Of a stretch of 64,000 bases of DNA, positions 10,695 through 51,068 are shown in pieces; within the stretch, counting starts at the first letter, position 1; every line of letters starts with the position of its first letter. A program made the position numbers and the translations under genes. The stretch covers positions 62,001 through 126,000 of the IMG/VR virus record IMGVR_UViG_3300042544_001590, one strand, 5' to 3'. Under the pieces are notes generated by a model. It made no database searches. It saw nothing but the letters and a program-made list of their open reading frames with translations, and had not been told where the DNA came from.

Positions 10695-10766
10695 CGCCGA
10701 ATATATCAGGGGTAGATAAGCTGGCTCATAACCAGAAGGTCGGGGATTCGAATTCCTCTTCGGCAA
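10695..10766 (+). tRNA. tRNA-Met(CAT), initiator-like
   Basis: Cloverleaf with loop CTCATAA and C1:A72 mismatch; no encoded CCA. Confidence 0.85.
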
Positions 10767-10771
10767 CTTTA

Positions 10772-10845
10772 GCGTCTATGGTGTAATGGTAGCATCAAAC
10801 ACTTCCAATGTTTGGGTGTGGATTCAAATTCCACTGGACGCTCCA
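10772..10845 (+). tRNA. tRNA-Gly(TCC)
   Basis: Acceptor GCGTCTA/TGGACGC, loop CTTCCAA, T-loop TTCAAAT, encoded CCA. Confidence 0.92.
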
Positions 10846-10847
10846 AT

Positions 10848-10921
10848 TCAGGGATCATATAACGGCAGTATGGAACTCTCCAAAAGTTCTCGTGTGGATT
10901 TGACTTCCTCTCCCTGTGCCA
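10848..10921 (+). tRNA. tRNA-Trp(CCA), atypical
   Basis: Loop CTCCAAA, G73, CCA; T-loop TTTGACT, one T-T pair in the T-stem, U1:U72. Confidence 0.75.
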
Positions 10922-10926
10922 CTTTC

Positions 10927-11058
10927 ATGAAATACAAAAAGCTACGAAAGAAAATCAAAAATGATACCTCAACCTGCAAGTGGTTGAAATGGTTCAAGTG
11001 GAAAAGAACGTGTAAAGATAAAAAATATGACAATAACGGGACTACCGAAACACCTTGA
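10927..11058 (+). CDS. small basic peptide, 43 aa
   Basis: MKYKKLRKKIKND...; 3' part of ORF-track 10786..11058 lying downstream of the tRNAs. Confidence 0.4.
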   Translation: MKYKKLRKKIKNDTSTCKWLKWFKWKRTCKDKKYDNNGTTETP

Positions 11059-11374
11059 GAATTACTCCCTAGCAATTTTTGAATACTTTGCCACGGGGGA
11101 AGGTGTCACTACCGAAGTGGAATTATTATCATTTCCCGGACAAAAGCCAACGATTGGGTGGGAGGGATTATCAAACAACATCATACCAGCGGTAATTGAA
11201 AGGAAAGAAACCATGTATGAAAAGGAACATGTGTGGTTGGAATGGAATCCCGAATTCAAGGCAGCGTTTTTCGACAATTTTGGAGTCGGGGACTGGATGC
11301 AATTCCACAATTGCTGTGTGAAGCATGGTTCATGGATGAATCTGGTGAAGAAAGCGCATTATAATTTGTCATGA
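11027..11374 (+). CDS. hypothetical protein
   Basis: ORF track; operon context. Confidence 0.7.
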   Translation: MTITGLPKHLENYSLAIFEYFATGEGVTTEVELLSFPGQKPTIGWEGLSNNIIPAVIERKETMYEKEHVWLEWNPEFKAAFFDNFGVGDWMQFHNCCVKHGSWMNLVKKAHYNLS

Positions 11375-11595
11375 AATTCTCCAAGATTAAAAGATTCTGG
11401 ATCACCAATTTCGGAATGCCTGATATATCCTTCGGTATCCACATCTGCATGGACAAAAGGATTGACATCCACTTTCTCTGGTATATGATCAGCTTTGGCA
11501 GAGTTCCCATCTACGAAGAGAAGGGAAAGCTGTTCGCCGCCAGTAATTCCTATCACACCGGAAGATCGAAACGACTGAGAGCGGGAGTGCCTTAA
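11371..11595 (+). CDS. small hypothetical protein
   Basis: ORF track; 4-nt overlap; stop codon is the TAA of a motif copy. Confidence 0.7.
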   Translation: MKFSKIKRFWITNFGMPDISFGIHICMDKRIDIHFLWYMISFGRVPIYEEKGKLFAASNSYHTGRSKRLRAGVP

Positions 11596-11610
11596 AAACT
11601 AGAATACAAT
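11593..11610 (+). promoter_or_regulatory. TAAAAACTAG-AA-TACAAT promoter, 6 nt before ATG
   Basis: Same architecture as the array motif. Confidence 0.8.
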
Positions 11611-11616
11611 ACGAAT

Positions 11617-12075
11617 ATGAATCAAGAATTAATAACACACGACTCGGAGACACTGAAACATGTCAACGAGGTAAGAAACAACATATGGACTCTGATCAAA
11701 GAGTTGGATCATAGGGCGCAAGTTCATGATGCTTCCAAATTTGAAGAACCGGAGAGAAGTATCTTTGCCAGCAACACTTCCAAATTGGCGAAGACCCAAT
11801 ATGGGACGGATGAATATTCCAAGCTGTTGGAGGAAGTGAAACCAGCAATTGAACATCATTACTCAAAAAACACTCACCATCCCGAACATTGGCCGAACGG
11901 CATTGAGGACATGGATTTACTTGATCTTGTTGAAATGTTAGCAGATTGGGCGGCTGCAACAAAAAGAAATAAGAATGGTAACATCCATAAGTCAATCGAA
12001 CATAATCAGGAGAGATTTAAAATAACACCACAATTATCAAAAATTTTCACAAACACTGTAAATAGATATTTTTAA
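11617..12075 (+). CDS. HD-superfamily-like protein (DUF5662-like)
   Basis: VHDASKF...HHYSKNTHHPEHW...EMLADW pattern. Confidence 0.7.
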   Translation: MNQELITHDSETLKHVNEVRNNIWTLIKELDHRAQVHDASKFEEPERSIFASNTSKLAKTQYGTDEYSKLLEEVKPAIEHHYSKNTHHPEHWPNGIEDMDLLDLVEMLADWAAATKRNKNGNIHKSIEHNQERFKITPQLSKIFTNTVNRYF

Positions 12076-12077
12076 AC

Positions 12078-12500
12078 ATGAAACAAGTAAAATTAATCAT
12101 AGCAGCAGCGCATTCCGATACCGTATATTTCAATTATGGGGACGATTACTCGGATATCACACGAATTCTGGTGGAGGATCATTCCCCATGGGAAGAAGTC
12201 GAGGATGATCAAATCTTCGAACTCCAGAACTTTGTGAGTGATTTCAATGTCAGCAAAGAAAGAAAAGCTGGTAAATTCGCTTTCCTAATCGTCAGGGAAG
12301 ATCAGATTTCACCCCAATCAGCAATCAAATCCATTGTTGAGAAAAGGGAAAAGGAATTAAAAGAATCGAGGGAGAAGGAGCGTAAACGCAAGGAAGAAGC
12401 CGAACGCAAGAAACAAGAGAAGGAGATGAAGAAATTGGCGAAGACTAAGGAACAGAAAATCCTGCTTCTGGAACAATTGAAGAAAGAACTTGGAGAGTGA
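12078..12500 (+). CDS. hypothetical protein with charged coiled-coil C-terminus
   Basis: ORF track. Confidence 0.7.
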   Translation: MKQVKLIIAAAHSDTVYFNYGDDYSDITRILVEDHSPWEEVEDDQIFELQNFVSDFNVSKERKAGKFAFLIVREDQISPQSAIKSIVEKREKELKESREKERKRKEEAERKKQEKEMKKLAKTKEQKILLLEQLKKELGE

Positions 12501-12658
12501 AAACAGATGAACAATCATTGATCGATGTTTTAGCCAATGCTATAAGACATTCTTTACTATTTCCAAACAATCCAGCAACACCAATTATGAGGGAAGCATT
12601 AGATTTATACGAAAAAAGTAAAAAAGAACTTGAAAAAACAAACCAATCTGCTAAATAA
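12497..12658 (+). CDS. small hypothetical protein, 53 aa
   Basis: GTG start overlapping the upstream TGA; open frame to TAA at 12658. Confidence 0.5.
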   Translation: MKTDEQSLIDVLANAIRHSLLFPNNPATPIMREALDLYEKSKKELEKTNQSAK

Positions 12659-12761
12659 GAATAACGACATGAGCAACAACCAATATAATAATCAGGAGAA
12701 ACCAACACCGTATCGGTGGGGGCGCGAATGATCGTATTGTAATTATACATGTTGAATTCGC

Positions 12762-12788
12762 ACCCCATCTGAAAAGATGGGGTTTTTT
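12762..12788 (+). terminator. intrinsic terminator
   Basis: ACCCCATCT-GAAA-AGATGGGGT followed by a T-run. Confidence 0.88.
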
Positions 12789-12880
12789 ATTATCTGAGGG
12801 TTATGTGGCCGAACACATTAAAGTCCGAAAGGGAGATTGTGATGAAACAAGCACACTAAATGTTTTCAATATTTTTTTAT

Positions 12881-12968
12881 GGGTTTGTAGGTAAGTGGTT
12901 GAAACCAACGGACTTTTAATCCGTCTCCGAAAGGAACATCTCAGGTTCGAATCCTGATGAACCCACCA
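12881..12968 (+). tRNA. tRNA-Lys(TTT) with long variable arm
   Basis: Loop CTTTTAA, stem ACGGA/TCCGT, extra arm TCC-GAAA-GGA, T-loop TTCGAAT, CCA. Confidence 0.88.
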
Positions 12969-12969
12969 T

Positions 12970-13042
12970 ACACATGAACGCACCACGGCTGGGCGGGTGG
13001 ATTGTTACTCCATTGAACTTCGTTCGATCCGAAGCATGTGTG
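12970..13042 (+). tRNA. tRNA-Asn(GTT), atypical
   Basis: Acceptor ACACATG/CATGTGT, loop TTGTTAC, G73; A at position 8; no CCA. Confidence 0.75.
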
Positions 13043-13046
13043 CATT

Positions 13047-13121
13047 GATCCCATGGTGAAGTGGTTATCACCCCATACTTTCTATATGGTGTCCCCGATT
13101 CGAATTCGGGTGGGATCACCA
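13047..13121 (+). tRNA. tRNA-Glu(TTC)
   Basis: Acceptor GATCCCA/TGGGATC, loop CTTTCTA (U37), CCA. Confidence 0.88.
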
Positions 13122-13123
13122 AT

Positions 13124-13207
13124 TCTACAGTTCCTTAGTGGTCGAAAGGACTTGCCTTGTAAGCAAGATGCGTAAGCACATCGCCAGTTCGAATCTGGCC
13201 TGTAGAT
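13124..13207 (+). tRNA. tRNA-Thr(TGT) with long variable arm
   Basis: Acceptor TCTACAG/CTGTAGA, loop CTTGTAA, extra arm TGC-GTAA-GCA; no CCA. Confidence 0.85.
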
Positions 13208-13218
13208 CATTTTTTAAT

Positions 13219-13305
13219 GTGTTGTCTCTAATGATGGTGAATTAGGACGGTCTGTAAAATCGTTGCCTTCGGGCTTAGGGGATTCGAATTCCTCACAACA
13301 CACCA
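13219..13305 (+). tRNA. tRNA-Tyr(GTA)
   Basis: Loop CTGTAAA, long variable arm GCC-TTCG-GGC, CCA. Confidence 0.88.
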
Positions 13306-13307
13306 TA

Positions 13308-13383
13308 CAGGGATTGATGTAACTTGGTAGCATGAGACATTTGGATTGTCTTTGTTCGGATTCAACTTCCGAGTCCCTGACCA
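13308..13383 (+). tRNA. tRNA-Pro(TGG)
   Basis: C1-G72, A73, loop TTTGGAT (A37), CCA. Confidence 0.85.
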
Positions 13384-13392
13384 TTTTATAAT

Positions 13393-13472
13393 AGCTGCGT
13401 AGTGTAATGGTTCAGCACTGACGGTTTTGATCCGTCCAGAGTATCAGGGTTCAATTCCCACCGCAGCCACCA
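13393..13472 (+). tRNA. tRNA-Gln(TTG), irregular T-arm
   Basis: Loop TTTTGAT, stem GACGG/CCGTC, CCA; T-stem pairs fully only with an ATCA bulge. Confidence 0.75.
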
Positions 13473-14606: not shown

Positions 14607-16133
14607 ATGATCAGATTTCATAAATTATATCGCCAACTCATGCGGGAATACGTGGAGGATTTCGATGAAAAGTGGGAAAAGGCTGTTTCTGAATCGGAAG
14701 AACTTCAGGTTGCTTTGGATTTGATGAAGAATATCAAGGCGAAATTACAAGGAGAAATCTATATCGTTGGGGGGGTTCCCCGCGATCTTCTCATGGGCAA
14801 TACCATTGATGATGTGGATTTGGCTACCAACATTCCCGTGGAGGAATTGGAGAAACATTTTGAATTGAGAAACATTTCCAAGAACGATTCCCAACCCGTC
14901 TATGCCATTCTCTGGAAAGGTTATGTTTATGATCTGGCAAAATTCCGCACCGATTCTGGTGATATCGGGAGACAATCCAACGTATCAACTGAAACCGATT
15001 CATTTGAAAAGGATTCTGAGCGAAGAGATTTAACGATAAATTCTTTTGGTCTGGATGAAGAGGGTAAGATCGTGGATTATCAGGGTGGTCTGGAAGATTT
15101 GAAGAACAAGATCGTTCGTGCCGTGGGAGATGCCAAACAAAGATTTCTGGAAGACGCTACGAGAATCCTCCGTGTCTTTCGATTTGCTGCCAAGATGGAT
15201 TTTGAAATTGAGGATAATACCAAGAGGGCAGCAATTGAATTGAAACATCTCCTCCAAGACCCCAAGGCAATTTCCCAAGAAAGCATTTCCAAGGAATTTT
15301 TCAAGGCAGCAAAAACGGGACAAACGCTTGCAAATTTCCTGAAGAAATTACAGGACACGAAAATCCTCCATGACATCCTTCCCGAATTTACCACGATGGA
15401 AGGATTTGATCATGATCCCCAACACCACCCCGAAGGGGATTCCCAAGTTCTGGGTCACATCTACGAATGTCTAAAGGCATCCCCATACAAAGACCCTGTG
15501 ATCAATCTAGCTGTGCTTTTCCATGACTTCGGCAAAGCCACAACCAGAGGAAAGAAAGACAATGGTTTTAGCAATTATCATGGACACGAATCGGCGGGAG
15601 TTCCCATTGTAGAGGAAATCTTCAAACGCTTGCGCTTTGCTGAATTATCCCCCCAAGATAAAAAGAACATATTGGCGGCAGTTGATAAACACATGCTTGT
15701 CCATAATCTGGATAAGTTAAACATCAAGACTCTCACCAAGCTGATTCAGAACTCATCATGGGAAACCATCAAAGCGGTGGGCTATTGCGATGAAGCGTCC
15801 CGTGGTTCCGGTCTTTTCAACAAACAGGAATTTTGGGAGAAGATCAAAAGGGCGGAAGAAAAGGTTTCCAATATCGGGGGATCGGAAGATGAAACCAGAA
15901 AACGCCTGAAACAATATTTCAGTGGGGATAAATTGATGCAATGGTTTCCAATTCTCGTCAAGGATAAATCCAAATTCAAGGATATCACAGCAGCCTTACA
16001 GGAATATGTTTTAGAGGAATTGAATGCTGGGCGTGAGCCGAATGAAGAGGAAATGAAAACAATCGCTTCGGGCATTTTAAAGGGGAACCAATTCAATGAA
16101 TGGTTTTCCCACTATTCAAAGTTCGTGCTGTAA
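14607..16133 (+). CDS. cca: CCA-adding tRNA nucleotidyltransferase with HD domain
   Basis: VGGVPRDLLMG, DVDLAT, RRDLTINS, EDATRILRVFRF, LFHDFGK, HESAG. Confidence 0.93.
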   Translation: MIRFHKLYRQLMREYVEDFDEKWEKAVSESEELQVALDLMKNIKAKLQGEIYIVGGVPRDLLMGNTIDDVDLATNIPVEELEKHFELRNISKNDSQPVYAILWKGYVYDLAKFRTDSGDIGRQSNVSTETDSFEKDSERRDLTINSFGLDEEGKIVDYQGGLEDLKNKIVRAVGDAKQRFLEDATRILRVFRFAAKMDFEIEDNTKRAAIELKHLLQDPKAISQESISKEFFKAAKTGQTLANFLKKLQDTKILHDILPEFTTMEGFDHDPQHHPEGDSQVLGHIYECLKASPYKDPVINLAVLFHDFGKATTRGKKDNGFSNYHGHESAGVPIVEEIFKRLRFAELSPQDKKNILAAVDKHMLVHNLDKLNIKTLTKLIQNSSWETIKAVGYCDEASRGSGLFNKQEFWEKIKRAEEKVSNIGGSEDETRKRLKQYFSGDKLMQWFPILVKDKSKFKDITAALQEYVLEELNAGREPNEEEMKTIASGILKGNQFNEWFSHYSKFVL

Positions 16134-41231: not shown

Positions 41232-41239
41232 AGTATTAT

Positions 41240-41674
41240 TTAGTGAATTGGGTAATTATTTTCAAAGTATTCTATGAATTTGGCAGACACCGCATCTTTA
41301 CCATCTTTGATATTATCAAGCTCAATTTTTTCCAAATCTTCAGCCACCCTTTGATATTCGGATTGGGGAATTTTAAATCTTGGTAGGGACAGGATTTTAA
41401 TCCATTTGACTACCAATGGTGTCTTCTCAACATTTGAATATTTTAAATCAAAAATTTTATCGTTATAATAAGCACCCAAATCATCACACAACCAATTTCG
41501 CTCATTATCCCAATAAATACTACCCTCTTCGTTTTTATCAAACCATCCCCTAAACCAATCCAATAAATCTAAACGCTTTGCTGTTTTTTCTTTTGAATAT
41601 GGGGTTTCAACATAAAATGCGTCTATTTCTGCCAATTCGTATGCTTTTTGGATTGCGGTTTCTGATACTGTCAT
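41240..41674 (-). CDS. hypothetical protein
   Basis: ORF track; TTGACA-N16-TAAATT-N5-ATG. Confidence 0.72.
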   Translation of the reverse strand: MTVSETAIQKAYELAEIDAFYVETPYSKEKTAKRLDLLDWFRGWFDKNEEGSIYWDNERNWLCDDLGAYYNDKIFDLKYSNVEKTPLVVKWIKILSLPRFKIPQSEYQRVAEDLEKIELDNIKDGKDAVSAKFIEYFENNYPIH

Positions 41675-41756: not shown

Positions 41757-43208
41757 ATGGCTAGAATTTACAAAACAGATGAAGTGATCAAACTTTTCAA
41801 GGATAAACATGGGGATCGGTATGATTATTCTAAATTTGTTTATCCCGGTAAAAAGAATGATAAAGGGATTGTGATCTGTAGAGAGCATGGTGAATTTCTG
41901 ACTTCCAAACAATATCATTTAAAAGGGTGTGGTTGCCCCGAATGTGTTGGTGTTCCAAGAGGAGGTTTTAAACGGAGAACCCAAGAACAATTCATGGAAG
42001 AATTGAAAGAAAAATATCTAAAATTTTATGATTATGATTTTTCAAAATTCATATATAAGAACAATACTACCAAAGGAACTATCATATGCCCCAAACACGG
42101 GGAATTTCAAATCACACCCAAACACCTTTTGATGAGACAGTATGGTTGTTCGGAGTGTTCAGGGAAGAAAAGATTAACAATTGAAAAGATCAGGGAATTG
42201 ACATCCTATCAAATTCCCGATCAGGAATACACCAATAATAAAACACATATTAAAGCTGTTTGTGAATTGCACGGGGAATGGTTGGTGCGACCAGATAACC
42301 TACTTCATGCTAAAACGAGGTGTCCTGTATGTGCGGAGAATCTATCCAAGATTGAAGAAGAACTTAGGGAATTTGTTAAAACAGAGTTGGACGTTACCAT
42401 TATCACAAATGATAAACAAATTCTAGATAAAAAAGAATTGGATATCCTATCCCACAAACATAACATTGCAATTGAAATGAATGGTTTGTTTTGTCATTCG
42501 GAGGAAGGAGGTAAGGACAAACATTACCACCTACACAAGACGAATAAGTGCTTAGAGTCTGGTATTCGTTTATTTCATATATTTGAGGATGAATGGCGGA
42601 ATAAACAGGAGATTTGGAAATCCATTATTAGATATAATTTTAAAATGGTTCCCAATAAAATCCATGCTAGAAAATGTGAAATCAGATTGGTTGATAATTT
42701 CACCACCAAACAATTCTTAACAGATAATCATCTACAAGGATATTCTAATTGTTCTGTTTCTGTGGGACTTTATCATAATGATCAATTGGTATCCATATTA
42801 ACTTTTGGTAAGAGTAGATTCGATAAAAACGTGGAATGGGAGCTTATCCGTTTCGCCAATGTATTGAATACATCAGTAGTCGGTGGATTCCAGAAATTGT
42901 TCAAACACTTCATCAAGACTTACAATCCAAATTCCATTGTATCATATGCAGATAAACGATACTCAATTGGTAATGTATATCGTAGTGTTGGGATGGAAGA
43001 GATTGAAAACGATGCTGTTAATTATTATTATTTCAATAAGCGAGAAGGTGTTAGATATTCTCGCCATCAGTTCCAGAAACATAAGCTGAAAGATAAGTTA
43101 CCAATCTTTGATGAGTCCTTGAGTGAGGGTGATAATATGAAATTAAATGATTTTTACAGAATCTATGATTGTGGTAATTATAAATTTGTGTGGAGGAAAT
43201 CCTTGTAA
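41757..43208 (+). CDS. Hef-like free-standing homing endonuclease
   Basis: YDYSK/IC..HGEF/GC.EC repeats, ELDI...IAIEMNG.F.H, VGGFQKL...IVSYADKRYS; paralog of 26887..28572. Confidence 0.82.
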   Translation: MARIYKTDEVIKLFKDKHGDRYDYSKFVYPGKKNDKGIVICREHGEFLTSKQYHLKGCGCPECVGVPRGGFKRRTQEQFMEELKEKYLKFYDYDFSKFIYKNNTTKGTIICPKHGEFQITPKHLLMRQYGCSECSGKKRLTIEKIRELTSYQIPDQEYTNNKTHIKAVCELHGEWLVRPDNLLHAKTRCPVCAENLSKIEEELREFVKTELDVTIITNDKQILDKKELDILSHKHNIAIEMNGLFCHSEEGGKDKHYHLHKTNKCLESGIRLFHIFEDEWRNKQEIWKSIIRYNFKMVPNKIHARKCEIRLVDNFTTKQFLTDNHLQGYSNCSVSVGLYHNDQLVSILTFGKSRFDKNVEWELIRFANVLNTSVVGGFQKLFKHFIKTYNPNSIVSYADKRYSIGNVYRSVGMEEIENDAVNYYYFNKREGVRYSRHQFQKHKLKDKLPIFDESLSEGDNMKLNDFYRIYDCGNYKFVWRKSL

Positions 43209-43235
43209 TAATTGATTCCGGTATTAAGTATTACT

Positions 43236-44012
43236 ATGTTCAAGAAACAATTCAAATTATACGTCACCATCAATAAAATCAATGGTAAGGTCTATGGTGG
43301 AAAACATTATTGGTATCCAAAAACCAGATACATGGGATCAGGTTACAGGTTGAGACAGTCTATCAACAAATACGGGAGAGAGAATTTTGAAACAAGATGG
43401 TTTAATTTAAAGATTGATACCCCAGAAGATTTGGATAGATTGGAAATAAAATTAATCAGGAGATTACATCATAAATTCGGTAAGAGCAATTGTTATAATA
43501 TTCAAAAAGGTGGTAGGGGTGGTTATTACACCGAATACATGGACGAGAATGAATTGGAAGAGGTTTATTCTAAAATAAGCAATGGTCTTAAAGAAAAATA
43601 TAAAGACCCAGAACATTACGAGAAATGGAAGGAGTCCCTAAAGAAAAGGAAAGCTACGATGGATTTGAGAAAATCCAAAGAAGGTAAGTCTGAAAAAGAA
43701 ATCAAAAAGAGACAGTTCATGCTAGATAATGGGTTTGGCATAGTCACGTATGAAATATTATATCCCGATGGTAAATCTGTTGTTGAGAGTAAAACGCTCA
43801 GAGATTTTCTAACTGAGTATAAAACAGAAGATCATGTGTTTTCTCGTATCAGATCAAATGGTGAGTATATGTTTAAGAAGAGAACCAAGCTCACAAAACA
43901 TCCATTTCCAGTTAAGACAATTATAAAATATATATCAGAGATACGAACATTCAATACCTATAAAAACGAGGAAACCCGAGGGTCTTCGGCACCTCGGGTT
44001 TCAGATTTTTAG
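43236..44012 (+). CDS. Seg-like GIY-YIG homing endonuclease
   Basis: LYVTINKINGKVYGGKH...YMGSG..L..SINKYGRENF; convergent with gp23, as segD is in T4; TAAGTA-N5-ATG at 43236. Confidence 0.8.
   Translation: MFKKQFKLYVTINKINGKVYGGKHYWYPKTRYMGSGYRLRQSINKYGRENFETRWFNLKIDTPEDLDRLEIKLIRRLHHKFGKSNCYNIQKGGRGGYYTEYMDENELEEVYSKISNGLKEKYKDPEHYEKWKESLKKRKATMDLRKSKEGKSEKEIKKRQFMLDNGFGIVTYEILYPDGKSVVESKTLRDFLTEYKTEDHVFSRIRSNGEYMFKKRTKLTKHPFPVKTIIKYISEIRTFNTYKNEETRGSSAPRVSDF
43960..44010. terminator. bidirectional intrinsic terminator between seg-like gene and gp23
   Basis: 11-bp stem GAAACCCGAGG/CCTCGGGTTTC with T-tracts nearby on both strands. Confidence 0.8.
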
Positions 44013-44032: not shown

Positions 44033-45493
44033 TTACAGGTAAGTACTAACCGATCCGGGCGTAAACGCAGTTCCAAGACCTTTTACGATGATAAGGTGGT
44101 AATAGAGCGATGCACCAAAAATGTTGTTCACAATCCCGTAACGAGTCATAAGACCCACACGAGGAGCGAAATCATTTGGTCCAATCGTTCTTTGCACCAT
44201 GATCGGGATATACGGACAGTATATCAGACCAGTATCATAGTATTCAGAACCCTTGTAACCCAACAGCGCATATTCGACACCAGCACCGGAATTCGGAGCA
44301 TTGGTGTAGTAGTTAGGCGAGTAGAGCGAGGAGTTCTGAACTTCAGTCCTAGTATCACGATACACAGTCCAGCGGCTACCAACAGTACCAACTTTTGCGA
44401 TACCAACACCAGCCGTCGAAACGGTGCCATTGATTTCGTAAACCTTAAAGTCGGGAAGCATTTCGAGGATGCTGCAAACGCGGGGAGTGGCGATAACAAA
44501 GTTAGCGGCACCTCTACGGTTACGAGCAGCCATACGACCACTTTCGATAATAAGGCGTTGATAGAAGGTAAGATTCCTTTCAGCAGTCCAACGTCCATCC
44601 GCACTAACAGGACTCCAGATGGAGAAACCTGCGCCAGCACCAGCATTGAAGGCTGTTTGGATCATACGCATCACAACTTCGCGGTCGATTTCGGCTTGGA
44701 TTTCATACGACATTGCGTTCGTAAGTTCTCCATCGATATCGATACCGTTCATGTTTTTGATGTCTTGTTCCAACTCAACACTCCAACGAGTAGCAAGCCT
44801 ACGTGTTCCGGCCTCAACAGCGGTCTTTTCAAACTTGAGTTCGATCTGAGGGATTTTGCCCGTCAATTCGTAGTTACTCAGGAGTTCTGCAATACCACGG
44901 TCTTGATCTGCGAACGTCCACTCGGCATGACCCGAAAGGAAACCAGCAGATGTGCCAGTGAAACGTGTGTCCAGAAGTTGAAAACCAAGTTCGTCGTCGG
45001 GAAGACCTGCGCCACCGGAGTAAGCGTCGGTACCGTTACCACGAGAGGTGGAGGTGAAGGATTTACCGTCGATTCCATCAGCACCAAGGGTATCACCTTG
45101 ATAAGCATAACGGAGAGCGAAGGCAAGTCCGACTGGACCACCCATGGGTTGAACACCCACGATTTCGTTAGAGATCAATTCAGGGAAAGTACGCCGAATC
45201 ATAGGAATCAGAATCTTTGGCAGACGAGCATCACCGGGGGCATAGTTATCGCTGTTAGCGATACCATTGCCAAGGGAAGCAGCCGCACCAAACACACCAC
45301 CGCTAGCGGCAGTATTCGATTCTTGGTAGCACCACTGTTCTTGGTTTTCCAGAAGCATGGCAGTAGTCTTGTAAACGTGTTCGTTACGAATAGCTGGGAT
45401 CGAGTCCGAGCTATAATCGAGAACTTTACGCCACTTGGCAACTGCTTGTTGCATCTTGGAGCCTTGGATATCAGTAGATGGTAGATTATTCAT
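44033..45493 (-). CDS. gp23: major capsid protein gp23
   Basis: LIPMIRRTFP.LI...VGVQPMGGPVGLAFALRY, ELEQDIKNM.GID...EL...MSYEIQAEIDRE, YCPYIP, PRVGLMTRYG. Confidence 0.97.
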   Translation of the reverse strand: MNNLPSTDIQGSKMQQAVAKWRKVLDYSSDSIPAIRNEHVYKTTAMLLENQEQWCYQESNTAASGGVFGAAASLGNGIANSDNYAPGDARLPKILIPMIRRTFPELISNEIVGVQPMGGPVGLAFALRYAYQGDTLGADGIDGKSFTSTSRGNGTDAYSGGAGLPDDELGFQLLDTRFTGTSAGFLSGHAEWTFADQDRGIAELLSNYELTGKIPQIELKFEKTAVEAGTRRLATRWSVELEQDIKNMNGIDIDGELTNAMSYEIQAEIDREVVMRMIQTAFNAGAGAGFSIWSPVSADGRWTAERNLTFYQRLIIESGRMAARNRRGAANFVIATPRVCSILEMLPDFKVYEINGTVSTAGVGIAKVGTVGSRWTVYRDTRTEVQNSSLYSPNYYTNAPNSGAGVEYALLGYKGSEYYDTGLIYCPYIPIMVQRTIGPNDFAPRVGLMTRYGIVNNIFGASLYYHLIIVKGLGTAFTPGSVSTYL

Positions 45494-45556
45494 ATATTTG
45501 ACTTTCTATTCACATTGTTCAGGAATTACTTCCTCATAGTGCGGGGTGGAAATTGT

Positions 45557-46444
45557 TTACCTACGGAATGTTTGTTTTTTCAAAACATCCAGATAGGGAT
45601 CAGATTCTTCATCCGTATTAGTATTTATCTTTTCCGTGACAATTTTTTGTTCTTTCACGAAATCGGGCTTATGTTTGCGATTTTGAACCGCTTCTTCCTT
45701 GATGGTTTCCAGTTGCTTTTTCTCTTGTTTTTCGAAAAGGCGAACGGTGTAATCAAAGTTCTCCTGAATGAATTGCAGGGACTTGTCTCCCAGAGCCTTC
45801 TTAACAAAGTTCTTTTTGGTTTCGGGATACTTGGAAGTTCTGGCTTCAAGGAAGAGCTTGACTTCAGACTTGTTCTTGGATTCAGTAAGAACTCTCATGC
45901 TCTTTTCAAGCTCTTCGTTTCTCTTGCGGAGCTTGTCGATTTCGGTCTTGCCTTCCACGATGGCACCCGAAACGGATTCCTTCATGACAGCAAGATCAAT
46001 TGCGAAAACCTTCTTGAGATTTTCCAGAACATTCATCGCAGTCTTATTCTTAACAGCTTGTTTAATATCTGCTGTTGGAACGGACTCTTCAATGAATTCA
46101 TCGAGGAAAGCACTAACGGATTCGGTGAGTTGTTTCTTGAACTTGAGGAGATCACCGTTCTGTTCACGCTCATACTTTTTAATAACCTTGACAAGCTTTG
46201 CGGTCTTATCCCTATCAAAAGCTTCCATGATCTTCTTCATCTTGAGAGTGCGATCCTTATCAACAGATGACATGAGGGTTTTGAGCTTGGATGCATAGAC
46301 ATCATCCTGTTCCAAAAGGGCAGCTTCAACAGCCAGATCAATTTTGGCTTCAAGGGATTCCTGAATCGCCTTTACGGATTCATCACTGAGTCCCAAGCTT
46401 TTTTGGATGTCTTCCGAGAAAAGGTTCGTGCTTTTTTTCTTCAT
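45557..46444 (-). CDS. gp22: prohead core scaffold gp22-like
   Basis: Coiled-coil, E/K-rich, directly upstream of gp23; TAAATA-N5-ATG at 46444. Confidence 0.82.
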   Translation of the reverse strand: MKKKSTNLFSEDIQKSLGLSDESVKAIQESLEAKIDLAVEAALLEQDDVYASKLKTLMSSVDKDRTLKMKKIMEAFDRDKTAKLVKVIKKYEREQNGDLLKFKKQLTESVSAFLDEFIEESVPTADIKQAVKNKTAMNVLENLKKVFAIDLAVMKESVSGAIVEGKTEIDKLRKRNEELEKSMRVLTESKNKSEVKLFLEARTSKYPETKKNFVKKALGDKSLQFIQENFDYTVRLFEKQEKKQLETIKEEAVQNRKHKPDFVKEQKIVTEKINTNTDEESDPYLDVLKKQTFRR

Positions 46445-46481
46445 ATTATTATTTAGAGATTGGGTATGAATTTTTTGAAAA

Positions 46482-46883
46482 TCAGAACAAAGGATTGTCA
46501 ATTTCTTGAGCGATCCGATTCTGTATTTTAGAATTTATCACTTGTTTAAGATGTTTGTGGGCTTCCGCGTGATTATTGGTCATAATGGCCTCAATGAATT
46601 TGGACAGTGTGGTGGATTCCTTCACACAATTGTTGACGGTCTTTCCGCCTTTCTTTTTGGTGCCTTGTTTCTTATAACCTTTCCAACATGCTTTCTTTTC
46701 CTCGTCCTCTTGATTGGCTTCTTCATTATCCTCATCAAAAGCATTGCCGCGATTATACGATCCCTTGCCTTTCTTCGGCTTTTCGGTTTTGGTCGCAGGG
46801 GCAAAATGCTTGCGCTGTTTCACTTCAGGGCCGTCGAAAACGTGTTTGCCCTGTTTCTTCAAATGTTTATATGTTTTACCCAT
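46482..46883 (-). CDS. prohead core gp67/68-like protein with an N-terminal ArfA-like segment
   Basis: Position between gp21 and gp22; EKPKKGKGSYNR; CWKGY...NCVKE; C-terminal helical FIEAI..NN..EA...L. Confidence 0.62.
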   Translation of the reverse strand: MGKTYKHLKKQGKHVFDGPEVKQRKHFAPATKTEKPKKGKGSYNRGNAFDEDNEEANQEDEEKKACWKGYKKQGTKKKGGKTVNNCVKESTTLSKFIEAIMTNNHAEAHKHLKQVINSKIQNRIAQEIDNPLF

Positions 46884-46891
46884 GATATTAT

Positions 46892-47554
46892 TTAGATTGA
46901 ATTGATAAATTTTATGATCTGTGCGCGAAGATAATTATCAACATCGTGTTTGGGGAGGGTTTTGAGGGATTTACCAAAGTCTTCATAGATTTGTTCAAAT
47001 CTTCCATCTTGATTAACCACAAAACTAGCACTCTCCAAAATCCCATTAACAAAAGCCTTTGGGTAAGAAGGATCAGCAACAGCATCAATGGCTACTAAAT
47101 GCATATTCTGGACGACACTATAATTTTGATTTTCACTTAATTGTCCAAGCGCACGAGTGGACATCCCGATCTTAACGCCATCATTGATGAGGGAACGAAG
47201 GATTTGACCTGTTGGTGTTGATAGAACTTTTGCTTTACCGATGAAATAATCATCAACTTCCGATAGTTCCGTAACCAAGTGGCAAGCTCTTTCAAGATTA
47301 ACATCAGCACTGGATGGGTGATTGAGTTCTCCCATGGCGCGTCCCGGCATGATCATTTCATTAACATATCGTTGGACTTCTGTTCTAGTGTCGTCCAATT
47401 TATACATGCGAGAATTTTTGTTAATTTGATTACAACCTATAAATGGGCCTTTCACATATAGGTTAGATGCACTGTTTCTATTTGATTGTTCTTCAATAAC
47501 TTCAAAGTTATCAAACACATCAGGATTTTCAGCAATCAACTTTAATTTAAGCAT
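46892..47554 (-). CDS. gp21: prohead protease gp21
   Basis: LYVKGPF, N.N.RMY, AMGELNHP, TPTGQI, GMSTRALG, DAVADPS. Confidence 0.93.
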   Translation of the reverse strand: MLKLKLIAENPDVFDNFEVIEEQSNRNSASNLYVKGPFIGCNQINKNSRMYKLDDTRTEVQRYVNEMIMPGRAMGELNHPSSADVNLERACHLVTELSEVDDYFIGKAKVLSTPTGQILRSLINDGVKIGMSTRALGQLSENQNYSVVQNMHLVAIDAVADPSYPKAFVNGILESASFVVNQDGRFEQIYEDFGKSLKTLPKHDVDNYLRAQIIKFINSI

Positions 47555-47586
47555 ATCCTTATTTATTCATAAGGAATACAATTTCA

Positions 47587-48051
47587 TTAATTTAGCTCTT
47601 TTTCCGTGATAATAATGAACTCCATGCCATGTTTCTTTGCAAATTCCTTTGCAAATTTTATCTTGTCTTGTAAGTTTTGGAAAGCCACCTGTTCATATAA
47701 CAAATTCGCCTTCTTCTTACCCTTCCCAGCTTTCGGCTCTTGCGTCTGCTTCCAAGGCTTGACTTCCACCAGATATTTTTTGACAATATCCCCCTCCTGT
47801 ATCTTTACATAAGCGTCCACAAAATAAGTCCGTGTCTTTTGCTGAAGAGTGTCCCTGTAGGGAATTTTAATTTCCTCACTTCCCCACTCCACCACATTGG
47901 GATTATTATCACAAAAACGGAAAAATTTCAATTCCAAACCGGATCGGTATATGATATTATCAATCTTACCGACATATTTCTGAATATTTTTCGGAACATA
48001 AAATCCTTGGTGGAACTTCTTATTCCTTTTTGATAATCCCAAAGAACCCAT
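47587..48051 (-). CDS. gp4: head completion nuclease gp4-like
   Basis: YRSGLE..FF.FCD.NP.V.EWGSEEI.IPY, RTYFVD, EVKP. Confidence 0.88.
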   Translation of the reverse strand: MGSLGLSKRNKKFHQGFYVPKNIQKYVGKIDNIIYRSGLELKFFRFCDNNPNVVEWGSEEIKIPYRDTLQQKTRTYFVDAYVKIQEGDIVKKYLVEVKPWKQTQEPKAGKGKKKANLLYEQVAFQNLQDKIKFAKEFAKKHGMEFIIITEKELN

Positions 48052-50983: not shown

Positions 50984-51068
50984 TATGATTATTTAGCGAA
51001 ACAAAATCTAAATCAAGGAAAAAAGTTATTTATTGTTGAAATAAATTACCGATAATATCCCATAACAA

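What the first reader, a model, noticed from the sequence alone, without database searches (positions are those of the whole stretch)
46482..46883. ArfA-like ribosome-rescue motif fused to a prohead core protein
Seen: the gene between gp21 and gp22 has a basic N-terminal ~45 aa containing EKPKKGKGSYNR, an acidic linker (DEDNEEANQEDEE), a CWKGY...NCVKE segment and a helical core-protein-like C-terminus. Known: KKGKGSY.R is the conserved motif of ArfA (E. coli EKNKKGKGSYMR), which binds the empty mRNA channel and recruits RF2; native ArfA must be C-terminally truncated to act; gp21 cuts core proteins after Glu and some fragments stay in the head. Inference: head maturation could release an ArfA-like peptide that is injected and rescues or blocks stalled ribosomes, fitting the tRNA/CCA kit. 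It may instead be just a basic DNA-binding core peptide.
Basis: partly seen in the sequence, partly recalled or inferred. Interest (0 to 1): 0.7.

Follow-up and report, generated by a model that had tools for sequence, protein, structure and literature searches.

The report
ArfA-like peptide on phage head-core protein
A T4-like lake phage carries, on a small internal head-scaffold protein, a conserved peptide homologous to the part of the bacterial ribosome-rescue factor ArfA that plugs the ribosome's empty mRNA channel. The protein's layout suggests that the head protease cuts this peptide loose, but what the peptide then does has not been tested.

Summary
The gene is window 46482-46883 (minus strand, 133 aa) and lies between the gp21 protease gene and the gp22-like and gp23 genes. 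It has four parts:
- a basic, disordered N-terminal module (aa 1-51) containing the motif TEKPKKGKGSYNR
- an acidic linker
- a two-cysteine beta-hairpin (the CWKGY...NCVKE segment)
- a confident two-helix C-terminus

The ArfA likeness is real but short. The Pfam ArfA score is borderline (23.5 bits; cutoff 25.5). Forty-three of 52 homologues match at E<=0.01. A profile of the module finds only ArfA chains in the PDB. hhalign against gamma-proteobacterial ArfA gives 96.5% probability (E 1e-9), but over only 17 columns (ArfA residues 27-43, the mRNA-channel segment).

ArfA's RF2-binding N-terminus and its distal KH tail are not detectable. The whole module does, however, match free-standing 38-90 aa ArfA-like mini-proteins of other phages and of bacteria.

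The C-terminal helices resemble the T4 gp67 prohead core protein (hhalign 77%, E 2e-5), and the gene order is conserved in relatives. A hydrophobic-x-Glu junction, the T4 protease type of site, precedes the helices in about 90% of members.

The family is modular, and some members lack the ArfA-like module, so the module is cargo rather than a structural part.

Release, injection, ribosome binding and rescue are all untested. I rate this a new variant of a known kind.

The parts
46482..46883 (-). The whole gene: a 133-aa modular prohead-core-type protein (stop codon at 46482-46484).
   Evidence: ORF listing. There are about 95 full-length homologues. The gene order gp21-X-gp22-gp23 is conserved in L007, L009 and L010; L008 shows X-gp22-like-gp23 downstream of an uncharacterised 524-aa gene.
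46731..46883 (-). ArfA-like basic module, aa 1-51. It is predicted to be disordered and ends in A-F-D-E51.
   Evidence: pLDDT is 45-65 and pI is 10.1. A profile of this module retrieves free-standing 38-96 aa ArfA-like mini-proteins over profile positions 4-49 to 24-48, mostly about 13-49, at E 3e-8 to 6e-4 among 1.84 billion proteins.
46743..46793 (-). Core of the ArfA homology, aa 31-47 (TKTEKPKKGKGSYNRGN). It equals E. coli ArfA residues 27-43, the mRNA-entry-channel segment.
   Evidence: Pfam PF03889 matches aa 31-46 to profile positions 25-40 of 44. The only PDB hits are six distinct ArfA chain sequences. hhalign gives probability 96.5%, E 9.9e-10. Thirteen consecutive residues are identical to Shewanella ArfA.
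46698..46736 (-). Acidic linker, aa 50-62 (DEDNEEANQEDEE).
   Evidence: Read from the sequence. pLDDT is below 50. The linker varies in length and content among homologues.
46617..46697 (-). Two-cysteine beta-hairpin mini-domain, aa 63-89 (CWKGY...NCVKE). It is a mobile module that ends at the invariant E89.
   Evidence: Strands at aa 70-78 and 81-88, pLDDT about 80. It is present or absent among family members. It shares 79-85% nucleotide identity with Synechococcus phage genes of different architecture. BFVD matches are to this hairpin only.
46617..46619 (-). The Glu89 codon of the junction V-K-E89|S90, a putative prohead-protease cleavage site.
   Evidence: E89 is invariant in 52 sequences. 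A hydrophobic residue lies at P3 in about 105 of 118 family members. The gp23 of this lineage keeps [YIL]-x-E|[SAT] near aa 58. T4 gp21 cuts after Glu at ITE and LTE sites (PMC5694885).
46485..46616 (-). Conserved C-terminal two-helix domain, aa 90-133, ending in PLF. It is gp67-like and is the presumed core-targeting part.
   Evidence: pLDDT is about 90. It is the only part present in every member. hhalign of A3 against a gp67 alignment gives probability 77%, E 2e-5, over 36 columns. phrog_1064 is the PHROG hit by the most members, though weakly.
46892..47554 (-). gp21-type head maturation protease (Peptidase_S77), the presumed processing enzyme.
   Evidence: phrog_207, E 4e-51. PF03420 is found in the syntenic genes of L007 and L009.
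45557..46444 (-). gp22-position scaffold-like protein (ATG at 46442-46444).
   Evidence: Its position is conserved in all homologous contigs. It has no PHROG hit, so the name rests on position only.
44033..45493 (-). gp23 major capsid protein.
   Evidence: BLASTP against T4 gp23 gives E 2e-39. It is about 33% identical to cyanophage gp23.
46887..46895 (-). A CTAAATAAT motif ending 4 nt upstream of the ORF's ATG. A second copy at 46448-46456 lies upstream of the gp22-like gene.
   Evidence: Nine copies in the window against 1.2 expected; none of 100 shuffles reaches nine.

Best explanation
The gene encodes a small prohead-core protein of a freshwater T4-like phage, built as a carrier plus cargo.

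Carrier. The carrier is the conserved C-terminal two-helix domain. It is related to the helical part of T4 gp67 and most likely anchors the protein in the scaffolding core.

Cargo. The cargo is a string of short, basic, interchangeable modules. In this phage there are two:
- a 51-residue module equivalent to a whole free-standing phage ArfA-like mini-protein; its centre is homologous to the ArfA segment that occupies the vacant mRNA entry channel of a stalled ribosome
- a two-cysteine beta-hairpin

Proposed mechanism. When the gp21-type protease is activated in the finished prohead, it cuts after Glu at the conserved hydrophobic-x-Glu junctions (F-D-E51 and V-K-E89). This frees the basic peptides from the helix anchor. 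The freed ArfA-like peptide then binds ribosomes whose mRNA channel is empty, which would either help release them or occupy them. This could happen in the next host after ejection with the DNA, or in the producing cell if the peptide leaks out of the prohead.

What is shown: the layout of the parts, the homology of the 17-residue core, conservation of the motif, conserved gene order, and the junction pattern.

What is inferred: incorporation into the core, cleavage, the fate of the peptide, and any action on ribosomes.
For: ArfA homology:
- Pfam gives E 3.8e-5 for this protein, and 43 of 52 homologues match ArfA.
- In a six-frame search it is the only hit in the genome, at 25.2-26.1 bits.
- A PDB search with the module profile returns ArfA and nothing else.
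- hhalign gives 96.5% probability, E 9.9e-10.

The module is a unit:
- Its profile aligns over profile positions 4-49 to 24-48 (mostly about 13-49) with 38-96 aa mini-proteins.
- Some of these lie in unrelated phage contigs.
- One group passes Pfam's ArfA cutoff, and one of its members lies in a bacterial-looking contig.
- Free-standing ArfA-annotated genes are reported in pelagiphage HTVC027P and Citromicrobium phage RXM (PMC12753301, PMC8953757).

The module is cargo, not structure:
- 72 of 95 homologues keep the strict motif, about 10 have near variants, about 7 have decayed copies and about 6 lack the module.
- All members keep the C-terminal helices.
- Other members carry other basic modules.

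The carrier:
- hhalign against gp67 gives 77%, E 2e-5.
- The gene order is conserved.

The junctions:
- E89 is invariant.
- A hydrophobic P3 residue occurs in about 90% of members.
- The same site type occurs in this lineage's gp23.

Precedent in T4: core-targeted proteins are trimmed by gp21 and injected, for example IPI and Alt (PMC9958956).
Against: - Similarity to classical ArfA covers only 17 residues. The RF2-binding beta-strand and helix region does not align.
- The basic tail and KH motif after the motif are absent and replaced by acidic residues. Yet E. coli ArfA cut back to 40 residues is inactive (PMC8012679).
- The RF2 complex prediction gave no answer.
- In T4, fragments of core proteins are said to leave the prohead (PMC9958956, PMC5694885).
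- Similarity to gp67 is moderate only, and the domain order is reversed.
- About 7% of members have a decayed motif, so the motif is dispensable in some lineages.
- There are no proteomic, expression or host data.
Confidence: 0.45

Rival explanations
1. The protein is a purely structural basic core peptide. On this view the lysine-rich modules, including the ArfA-like one, bind DNA or acidic scaffold parts, neutralise charge or set core size, and never meet a ribosome. The ArfA likeness would reflect descent or borrowing of a general nucleic-acid-binding peptide.
For: - The gene sits in the head-core cluster.
- All cargo modules are short, basic and of unknown function.
- T4 gp68 also has a very basic tail.
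- The module is disordered.
- Some members lack it or have let it decay.
- No RF2-binding region is detectable.
Against: - The motif keeps specific non-basic residues (T, E, P, G, G, S, Y, N). Thirteen consecutive residues are identical to Shewanella ArfA. Charge neutralisation would not need that.
- The same module exists as free-standing genes in non-structural regions of other phages and in bacteria.
- The invariant positions include G39, S42 and R45.
Confidence: 0.3
2. The module is a late-phase cytoplasmic ribosome-rescue helper that is not injected. The protein, or peptides leaking out of proheads after cleavage, would act in the producing cell. Its role would be to free ribosomes stalled on truncated mRNAs late in infection. 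The fusion to the core protein would serve only to co-express it at high copy with the late genes, or to time its release.
For: - T4 core fragments are reported to exit the prohead (PMC9958956, PMC5694885).
- By analogy with T4, there would be about 340 copies per prohead (PMC9958956), which is many peptides per cell.
- HTVC027P's ArfA-like gene is highly expressed late as well as early (PMC12753301).
- The phage also carries tRNAs and a CCA-adding enzyme, so it invests in translation.
Against: - No expression data exist for this phage.
- Tethering a rescue factor to a protein that is sequestered in proheads seems wasteful.
- The objections about the missing RF2-binding part apply here too.
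Confidence: 0.15
3. The match is a chance, low-complexity resemblance with no shared ancestry or function.
For: The protein is lysine-rich. The aligned stretch is only 16-17 residues. The hmmscan score is below Pfam's gathering cutoff.
Against: - Reciprocal searches find only ArfA.
- hhalign gives E 1e-9.
- The motif is conserved over more than 70 diverged homologues.
- Several relatives pass the Pfam cutoff.
- There is a single hit in the 207-kb genome.
Confidence: 0.03

Closest known systems
ArfA (alternative ribosome-rescue factor A, Pfam PF03889; E. coli YhdL, PDB 5MDV, 5MGP, 5U4I, 5H5U)
   Same: A 17-residue segment equals ArfA residues 27-43. It contains the KKGKGSY.R loop that sits in the vacant mRNA entry channel. 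It matches Shewanella ArfA at 13 consecutive residues.
   Different: - No detectable RF2-binding N-terminus.
- No distal basic tail or KH motif.
- No hydrophobic C-terminal tail; I did not check for arfA's truncation-based regulation.
- The segment is an internal module of a 133-aa head protein, not a 55-72 aa free protein.
- The score is borderline against Pfam's cutoff.
Free-standing phage ArfA-like mini-proteins (pelagiphage HTVC027P gp30, Citromicrobium phage RXM g10, and metagenomic 38-61 aa ORFs such as those in L012, L013 and L072)
   Same: The extended pattern [VI]K.R[KR]..PP..K.[HE]K.KKGKGSY.R[KR] aligns over nearly their whole length with aa 13-49 of the module. All are phage-borne.
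   Different: They are separate small genes in early or non-structural regions. Here the unit is fused, through an acidic linker and Glu junctions, to a head-core anchor. None of them has been tested for function.
T4 gp67 prohead core protein (phrog_1064)
   Same: - A helical segment of about 36 residues aligns (hhalign 77%, E 2e-5).
- Both are small genes in the portal-protease-scaffold-capsid cluster.
- Both have a hydrophobic-x-Glu junction next to the helix: invariant IE|GE in gp67 and VKE|S here.
   Different: - In gp67 the helix is N-terminal and is followed by an acidic tail. Here it is C-terminal and is preceded by basic cargo.
- The gene lies between 21 and 22, not between 20 and 68.
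- Direct HMM matches are weak.
T4 internal proteins IPI, IPII, IPIII and Alt with their capsid targeting sequence
   Same: The logic is the same: a short targeting part puts a cargo protein into the scaffolding core, gp21 cuts after Glu, and the cargo travels with the DNA to act on host machinery (PMC9958956, PMC5694885).
   Different: There is no sequence relationship. The T4 targeting sequence is a 10-residue N-terminal peptide. Here the presumed anchor is a 44-residue C-terminal helix pair. Injection is unproven here.
ArfT (Francisella) and BrfA (Bacillus), other release-factor-dependent rescue factors
   Same: They are small basic proteins that sense the empty mRNA channel and recruit a release factor. 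They show that the factor-recruiting part can differ completely between lineages (PMC8012679).

Membership tests
ArfA (PF03889) | Match to the family HMM at or above Pfam's gathering score (25.5 bits) | tested here: inconclusive
   hmmscan of the protein gives 23.5 bits, E 3.8e-5, below the cutoff. A six-frame search of the genome gives 25.2 bits, or 26.1 with neighbouring stretches, and is flagged as over the cutoff. Several close homologues carry PF03889.
ArfA (PF03889) | Conserved KGKGS loop segment that occupies the mRNA entry channel (E. coli residues about 27-43) | tested here: met
   Aligned. K37, G39, K40, S42 and R45 are invariant in 43 module sequences.
ArfA (PF03889) | N-terminal region that adds a beta-strand to RF2 and recruits it (E. 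coli residues about 1-26) | tested here: not met
   Neither the Pfam HMM, the PDB profile search nor hhalign aligns anything upstream of module position 31. The RF2 complex prediction gave no answer, which is neither for nor against.
ArfA (PF03889) | Basic tail after the loop, including the KH motif; E. coli ArfA cut to 40 residues is inactive (PMC8012679) | tested here: not met
   After Y43 the sequence reads N-R-G-N-A-F-D-E-D, followed by the acidic linker. The family consensus is Y.RK..F.EDEE.
ArfA (PF03889) | Small free-standing protein (55-72 aa) of beta- or gamma-proteobacteria | tested here: not met
   It is an internal module of a 133-aa phage head-cluster protein.
ArfA (PF03889) | RF2-dependent release of peptidyl-tRNA on nonstop ribosomes | not testable with these tools
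   This needs biochemistry or genetics.
T4 gp67-type prohead core protein (phrog_1064) | Sequence similarity to the gp67 helical region | tested here: inconclusive
   Profile-profile comparison gives 77% probability, E 2e-5, over 36 columns. Against single-sequence T4 gp67, E is 0.0055-0.008. phrog_1064 is hit by 6 of 35 members, best E 0.024.
T4 gp67-type prohead core protein (phrog_1064) | Small gene inside the portal/protease/scaffold/capsid cluster | tested here: met
   It lies between gp21 and the gp22-like gene, and this is conserved in diverged relatives. The order differs from T4, where it is 20-67-68-21-22-23.
T4 gp67-type prohead core protein (phrog_1064) | Cut by the prohead protease after Glu | not testable with these tools
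   Only the site pattern could be checked. E89 is invariant, and about 90% of members have a hydrophobic P3 residue.
T4 gp67-type prohead core protein (phrog_1064) | Present in the prohead core | not testable with these tools
   No cultured relative and no proteome are available.

The most novel reading that the evidence does not exclude
A widespread lineage of freshwater and marine T4-like phages uses its prohead core as a delivery device. A gp67-like helix anchor carries a cassette of exchangeable mini-peptides, and the head protease frees them. One peptide, the ArfA-like module, would be ejected with the DNA. It would act catalytically on host ribosomes in the first moments of infection, for example by clearing ribosomes stalled by RNA-cleaving host defences. 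That would make it the first virion-delivered ribosome-rescue factor.
Probability: 0.15. Interest if true: 0.85.

Novelty: new variant of a known kind. Interest (0 to 1): 0.6.

Why it matters
ArfA-type rescue has been treated as a back-up system of beta- and gamma-proteobacteria. Here the ribosome-channel segment of ArfA turns up in three new settings:
- as a conserved, apparently detachable module of a phage head-core protein, in about 90 protein clusters found here
- as free-standing mini-genes in unrelated phages
- as small ORFs in Firmicutes

If the peptide binds ribosomes, phages would be manipulating stalled-ribosome rescue. That links the finding to host defences that cut tRNA or mRNA, and to the tRNA and CCA-adding genes of the same phage.

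The carrier-plus-cargo layout also offers a natural system for studying how T4-like heads load and release small proteins.

If the peptide only binds DNA, the finding still warns that Pfam ArfA annotations in phage genomes, already used in two papers, rest on a 17-residue motif.

Tried and rejected
- tblastn of the whole protein against GenBank phages found nothing, and tblastn of aa 1-50 found only a chance-level match (E about 2) in Pseudomonas phage pf16. The low-complexity filter may play a part, and no cultured relative is in that collection.
- NCBIfam gave no hit.
- BLASTP against T4 gp67 gave no alignment. Only profile methods see the likeness.
- The predicted complex with E. coli RF2 scored 0.01. 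The tool's verdict is 'no answer', so I do not use it as evidence.
- The BFVD fold search gave no match at E<=0.001. The hits concern only the hairpin module.
- A search with the bacterial ArfA-like protein P0307, meant to place its lineage, returned only four proteins without names.
- Two top hits of the profile search (P0241, P0311) are long repetitive proteins that score by summed weak stretches. I rejected them as spurious.
- I tried a 14-nt version of the upstream motif as a late-promoter pattern. It was not enriched. Only the 9-nt core is enriched.
- No RNA run holding the gene was listed.
- The ESM Atlas look-alikes score 0.84, which is a lead only.
- I considered that the N-terminal MGKTYK might be a T4-type capsid targeting sequence, and rejected it. 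It is not conserved in members with N-terminal extensions, and no Glu follows within the first 19 residues.
- The genome has no RF-1/ArfB-type domain and no S21 gene.

Full report
**What is there**

The window belongs to a complete 207,489-bp viral record with direct terminal repeats. More than a dozen lake-water metagenome runs hold its sequence. Its gp23 is only about 33% identical to cyanophage gp23 and 28% to T4 gp23, so it represents a distant, uncultured T4-like lineage.

On the minus strand the gene order is:
- gp23, 44033-45493
- a 300-aa gene in the gp22 position, 45557-46444
- the gene in question, 46482-46883
- the gp21 protease, 46892-47554 (phrog_207, E 4e-51)
- a head-completion protein, 47587-48051

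It has a basic N-terminus with EKPKKGKGSYNR at aa 34-45 and an acidic run at aa 50-62. CWKGY...NCVKE lies at aa 66-89, and the C-terminus is helical.

AlphaFold2, run with a 52-sequence alignment, gives this picture:
- aa 1-62 are disordered (pLDDT 45-65)
- a beta-hairpin spans aa 70-88 (pLDDT about 80)
- helices span aa 91-101 and 105-129 (pLDDT about 90)

**Is the ArfA likeness real?**

Pfam's ArfA model matches aa 31-46 at E 3.8e-5 and 23.5 bits, just under the 25.5-bit cutoff. In a six-frame search it is the only match in the genome, at 25.2-26.1 bits.

The protein has about 95 full-length homologues among 90%-identity clusters, on contigs of up to about 200 kb. Many carry a precomputed PF03889 hit. 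Of 52 aligned homologues, 43 match ArfA at E<=0.01.

In an alignment of 43 N-terminal modules, K22, R24, K37, G39, K40, S42 and R45 are invariant. K6, G12, K13, P19, K25, P29, K38, G41 and Y43 are at least 90% conserved.

I also searched in the reverse direction. A profile of the module, run against all PDB sequences at E<=10, returns six sequences, and all six are ArfA. hhalign against an alignment of E. coli-type and Shewanella ArfAs gives 96.5% probability and E 9.9e-10. Shewanella ArfA reads TRTEKPKKGKGSYNRK where the phage reads TKTEKPKKGKGSYNRG.

So the motif is homologous to ArfA, not a compositional accident.

**How far does the likeness reach?**

Against classical ArfA it covers only 17 columns: module positions 31-47 against ArfA residues 27-43.

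According to the review PMC8012679, this C-terminal part of ArfA lies in the mRNA entry channel and senses that the channel is empty. The N-terminal part adds a strand to RF2's beta-sheet. A KH motif further downstream binds a pocket in the channel. ArfA cut back to 40 residues is inactive.

The phage module has no detectable counterpart of the RF2-binding part. After the motif it turns acidic instead of carrying the basic KH tail. Two defining features of ArfA were therefore tested and not met, and I do not file the protein as an ArfA.

**A closer set of relatives**

The module profile, searched against 1.84 billion representative proteins, found 78 hits at E<=0.001. Besides the core-protein family itself, about 30 are mini-proteins of 38-96 aa. 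They share the longer pattern [VI]K.R[KR]..PP..K.[HE]K.KKGKGSY.R[KR] and align over profile positions 4-49 to 24-48, mostly about 13-49, which is nearly their whole length.

Where these mini-proteins lie:
- Two lie in contigs with phage genes, in non-structural regions.
- A 41-aa version recurs in four viral contigs.
- One group passes Pfam's ArfA cutoff at 31-32 bits, and one of its members lies in a bacterial-looking contig.
- Small ORFs with the motif also occur in Peribacillus and in an Acutalibacteraceae genome.

Two papers have already annotated free-standing ArfA genes in phages, from the Pfam hit alone. One is Citromicrobium phage RXM g10 (PMC8953757). The other is pelagiphage HTVC027P gp30, which is expressed early and late (PMC12753301). 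I read the gp30 sequence and it ends in KPKKGRGSFKRD.

The module in the head protein therefore equals a complete member of a phage-borne class of ArfA-like mini-proteins. That argues for a function of its own.

**The carrier**

The only part present in every family member is the C-terminal helix pair ending in PLF.

Evidence linking it to T4 gp67:
- Compared with T4 gp67 alone it scores weakly (hhalign E 0.0055-0.008).
- Compared with an alignment of eight sequences (seven gp67 proteins and Syn9 gp130, which holds the same genomic position), it scores 77% probability, E 2e-5, over 36 columns.
- phrog_1064, the gp67 family, is the PHROG matched by the most members, though weakly.
- The gene order protease-X-scaffold-capsid is kept in relatives with 43-50% identity to the query (L007, L009, L010); in L008, 33% identical, X-scaffold-capsid is kept downstream of an uncharacterised 524-aa gene.

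I read this as a probable gp67 relative with the domain order reversed. In gp67 the helix comes first and an acidic tail follows. Here basic cargo comes first and the helix last.

**The cargo and the junctions**

The family is modular. Different members carry different cargo:
- a module beginning MPSKTEKQKKFFGA
- a module containing KQAVAIAYSKAGK
- a module containing HWLRHPKSQQEKK...VPVRGKR
- the ArfA-like module
- a GTVPL module
- the CWKGY hairpin

Acidic stretches separate the modules.

The hairpin is itself mobile. About 75 nt of it are 79-85% identical to genes of Synechococcus phages that have otherwise unrelated architectures, one with DUF7201 and one with DUF6321.

Among 95 whole-protein homologues, 72 keep the strict motif KG[KR]G[SA][YF].R. 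About 10 have near variants, about 7 have decayed copies and about 6 lack the module. The module is thus cargo under selection in most lineages, not a requirement of the core function.

Just before the helices, E89 is invariant. The residue two positions before it is hydrophobic in about 105 of 118 members, as in VKE|S, LTE|S, ITE|S and FDE|N. A second such site, AFDE, follows the ArfA-like module in this protein and in many relatives. In the minimal members, which have only the module and the helices, the two sites coincide as TFDE|N.

T4 gp21 cuts after Glu at sites such as ITE and LTE (PMC5694885). The gp23 of this lineage keeps [YIL]-x-E|[SAT] near residue 58, close to where T4 gp23 is cut.

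Cleavage is therefore a reasonable inference, but it has not been shown. The EEDEQ|S-type linkers in front of the module in longer members do not fit this pattern, and I leave them open.

**Mechanism and its weak points**

The best-supported reading has three steps:
- The helix anchors the protein in the core.
- The protease frees a 5.8-kDa (aa 1-51) or 10-kDa (aa 1-89) basic peptide.
- The peptide binds ribosomes with an empty mRNA channel.

Where this happens is open. T4 gives precedents for both fates (PMC9958956, PMC5694885). IPI and Alt stay in the head and are injected, while fragments of gp22, gp67 and gp68 are said to leave the prohead.

If the copy number is of the T4 gp67 order (about 340 per prohead, PMC9958956), an injected dose would be far below the number of ribosomes. 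That would suit a catalytic rescue factor better than a stoichiometric blocker. This point is inference.

Against a rescue role stand the missing RF2-binding part and the missing KH tail. However, other rescue factors (ArfT, BrfA) recruit release factors with unrelated sequences (PMC8012679).

The RF2 complex prediction gave no answer. The phage also carries eight predicted tRNA genes and a CCA-adding enzyme. It has no RF-1-domain protein and no S21 gene.

**Verdict**

The fusion of an ArfA-like mini-protein to a head-core anchor, with protease-type junctions, was not found described in the papers I searched. Phage ArfA-like genes as such have been noted before.

I rate it a new variant of a known kind, with interest 0.6.

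Noticed in passing
window 46887-46895, 46448-46456, 41235-41243, 50988-50996 (minus strand): CTAAATAAT occurs 9 times in the window against 1.2 expected; none of 100 shuffles reaches 9. Four copies end 4 nt upstream of the ATG of minus-strand structural genes. It may be a late-promoter-like or a translation-start signal. At that distance a promoter would give nearly leaderless mRNAs.
   Followed up: partly
window 46617-46697; L001:2802-3386; L002:2740-3939: The two-cysteine hairpin CWKGY...NCVKE is a mobile mini-domain. About 75 nt are 79-85% identical to genes of Synechococcus phages whose proteins have otherwise different architectures (DUF7201, or a 399-aa protein with DUF6321).
   Followed up: partly
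L012:6001-6117; L013:6001-6186; L072:2974-3099; L015:15768-15944: Free-standing 38-61 aa ArfA-like mini-genes lie in unrelated phage contigs and in pelagiphage HTVC027P (gp30). All carry the extended K.RK..PP...KKGKGSY.RK pattern.
   Followed up: partly
L016:2986-3144 (Peribacillus); L035:2938-3144 (Acutalibacteraceae); L014:5240-5509: Small ORFs with the KKGKGSY.R motif occur outside the beta- and gamma-proteobacteria, in Firmicute genomes and in a bacterial-looking metagenomic contig. ArfA-like factors may therefore be more widely spread than the family's usual description suggests.
   Followed up: no
L043:2842-3747; L046:2755-3375; L054:2812-3345; L064:2779-3264: Homologues of the core protein carry other N-terminal cargo modules separated by acidic EEDEQ|S-type linkers. 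Examples are MPSKTEKQKKFFGA..., ...KQAVAIAYSKAGK... and HWLRHPKSQQEKK...VPVRGKR. None has a Pfam name.
   Followed up: partly
window 41757-43208 and 43212-44012 (plus strand): Two plus-strand genes lie next to gp23 among minus-strand structural genes. The first matches an HNH/homing endonuclease PHROG at E 3.6e-123. The arrangement recalls T4 segD beside gene 23.
   Followed up: no
window 10695-13472 and about 14757-15119: ARAGORN finds eight tRNA genes, some unusually long (Lys 88 nt, Thr 85 nt). Rfam confirms six at the gathering score. A CCA-adding enzyme homologue lies nearby (93.6 bits).
   Followed up: no
window 45194-45493 (gp23 N-terminus); L007, L008, L009: The gp23 of this lineage lacks the T4 LTE|A site at the aligned position. 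It keeps WC-[YIL]-x-E|[SAT] about eight residues earlier, which is a likely maturation site.
   Followed up: partly
window 45500-47600: More than a dozen lake-water metagenome runs from different samples hold this stretch, and two marine runs hold a small part of it. No RNA run was listed.
   Followed up: no
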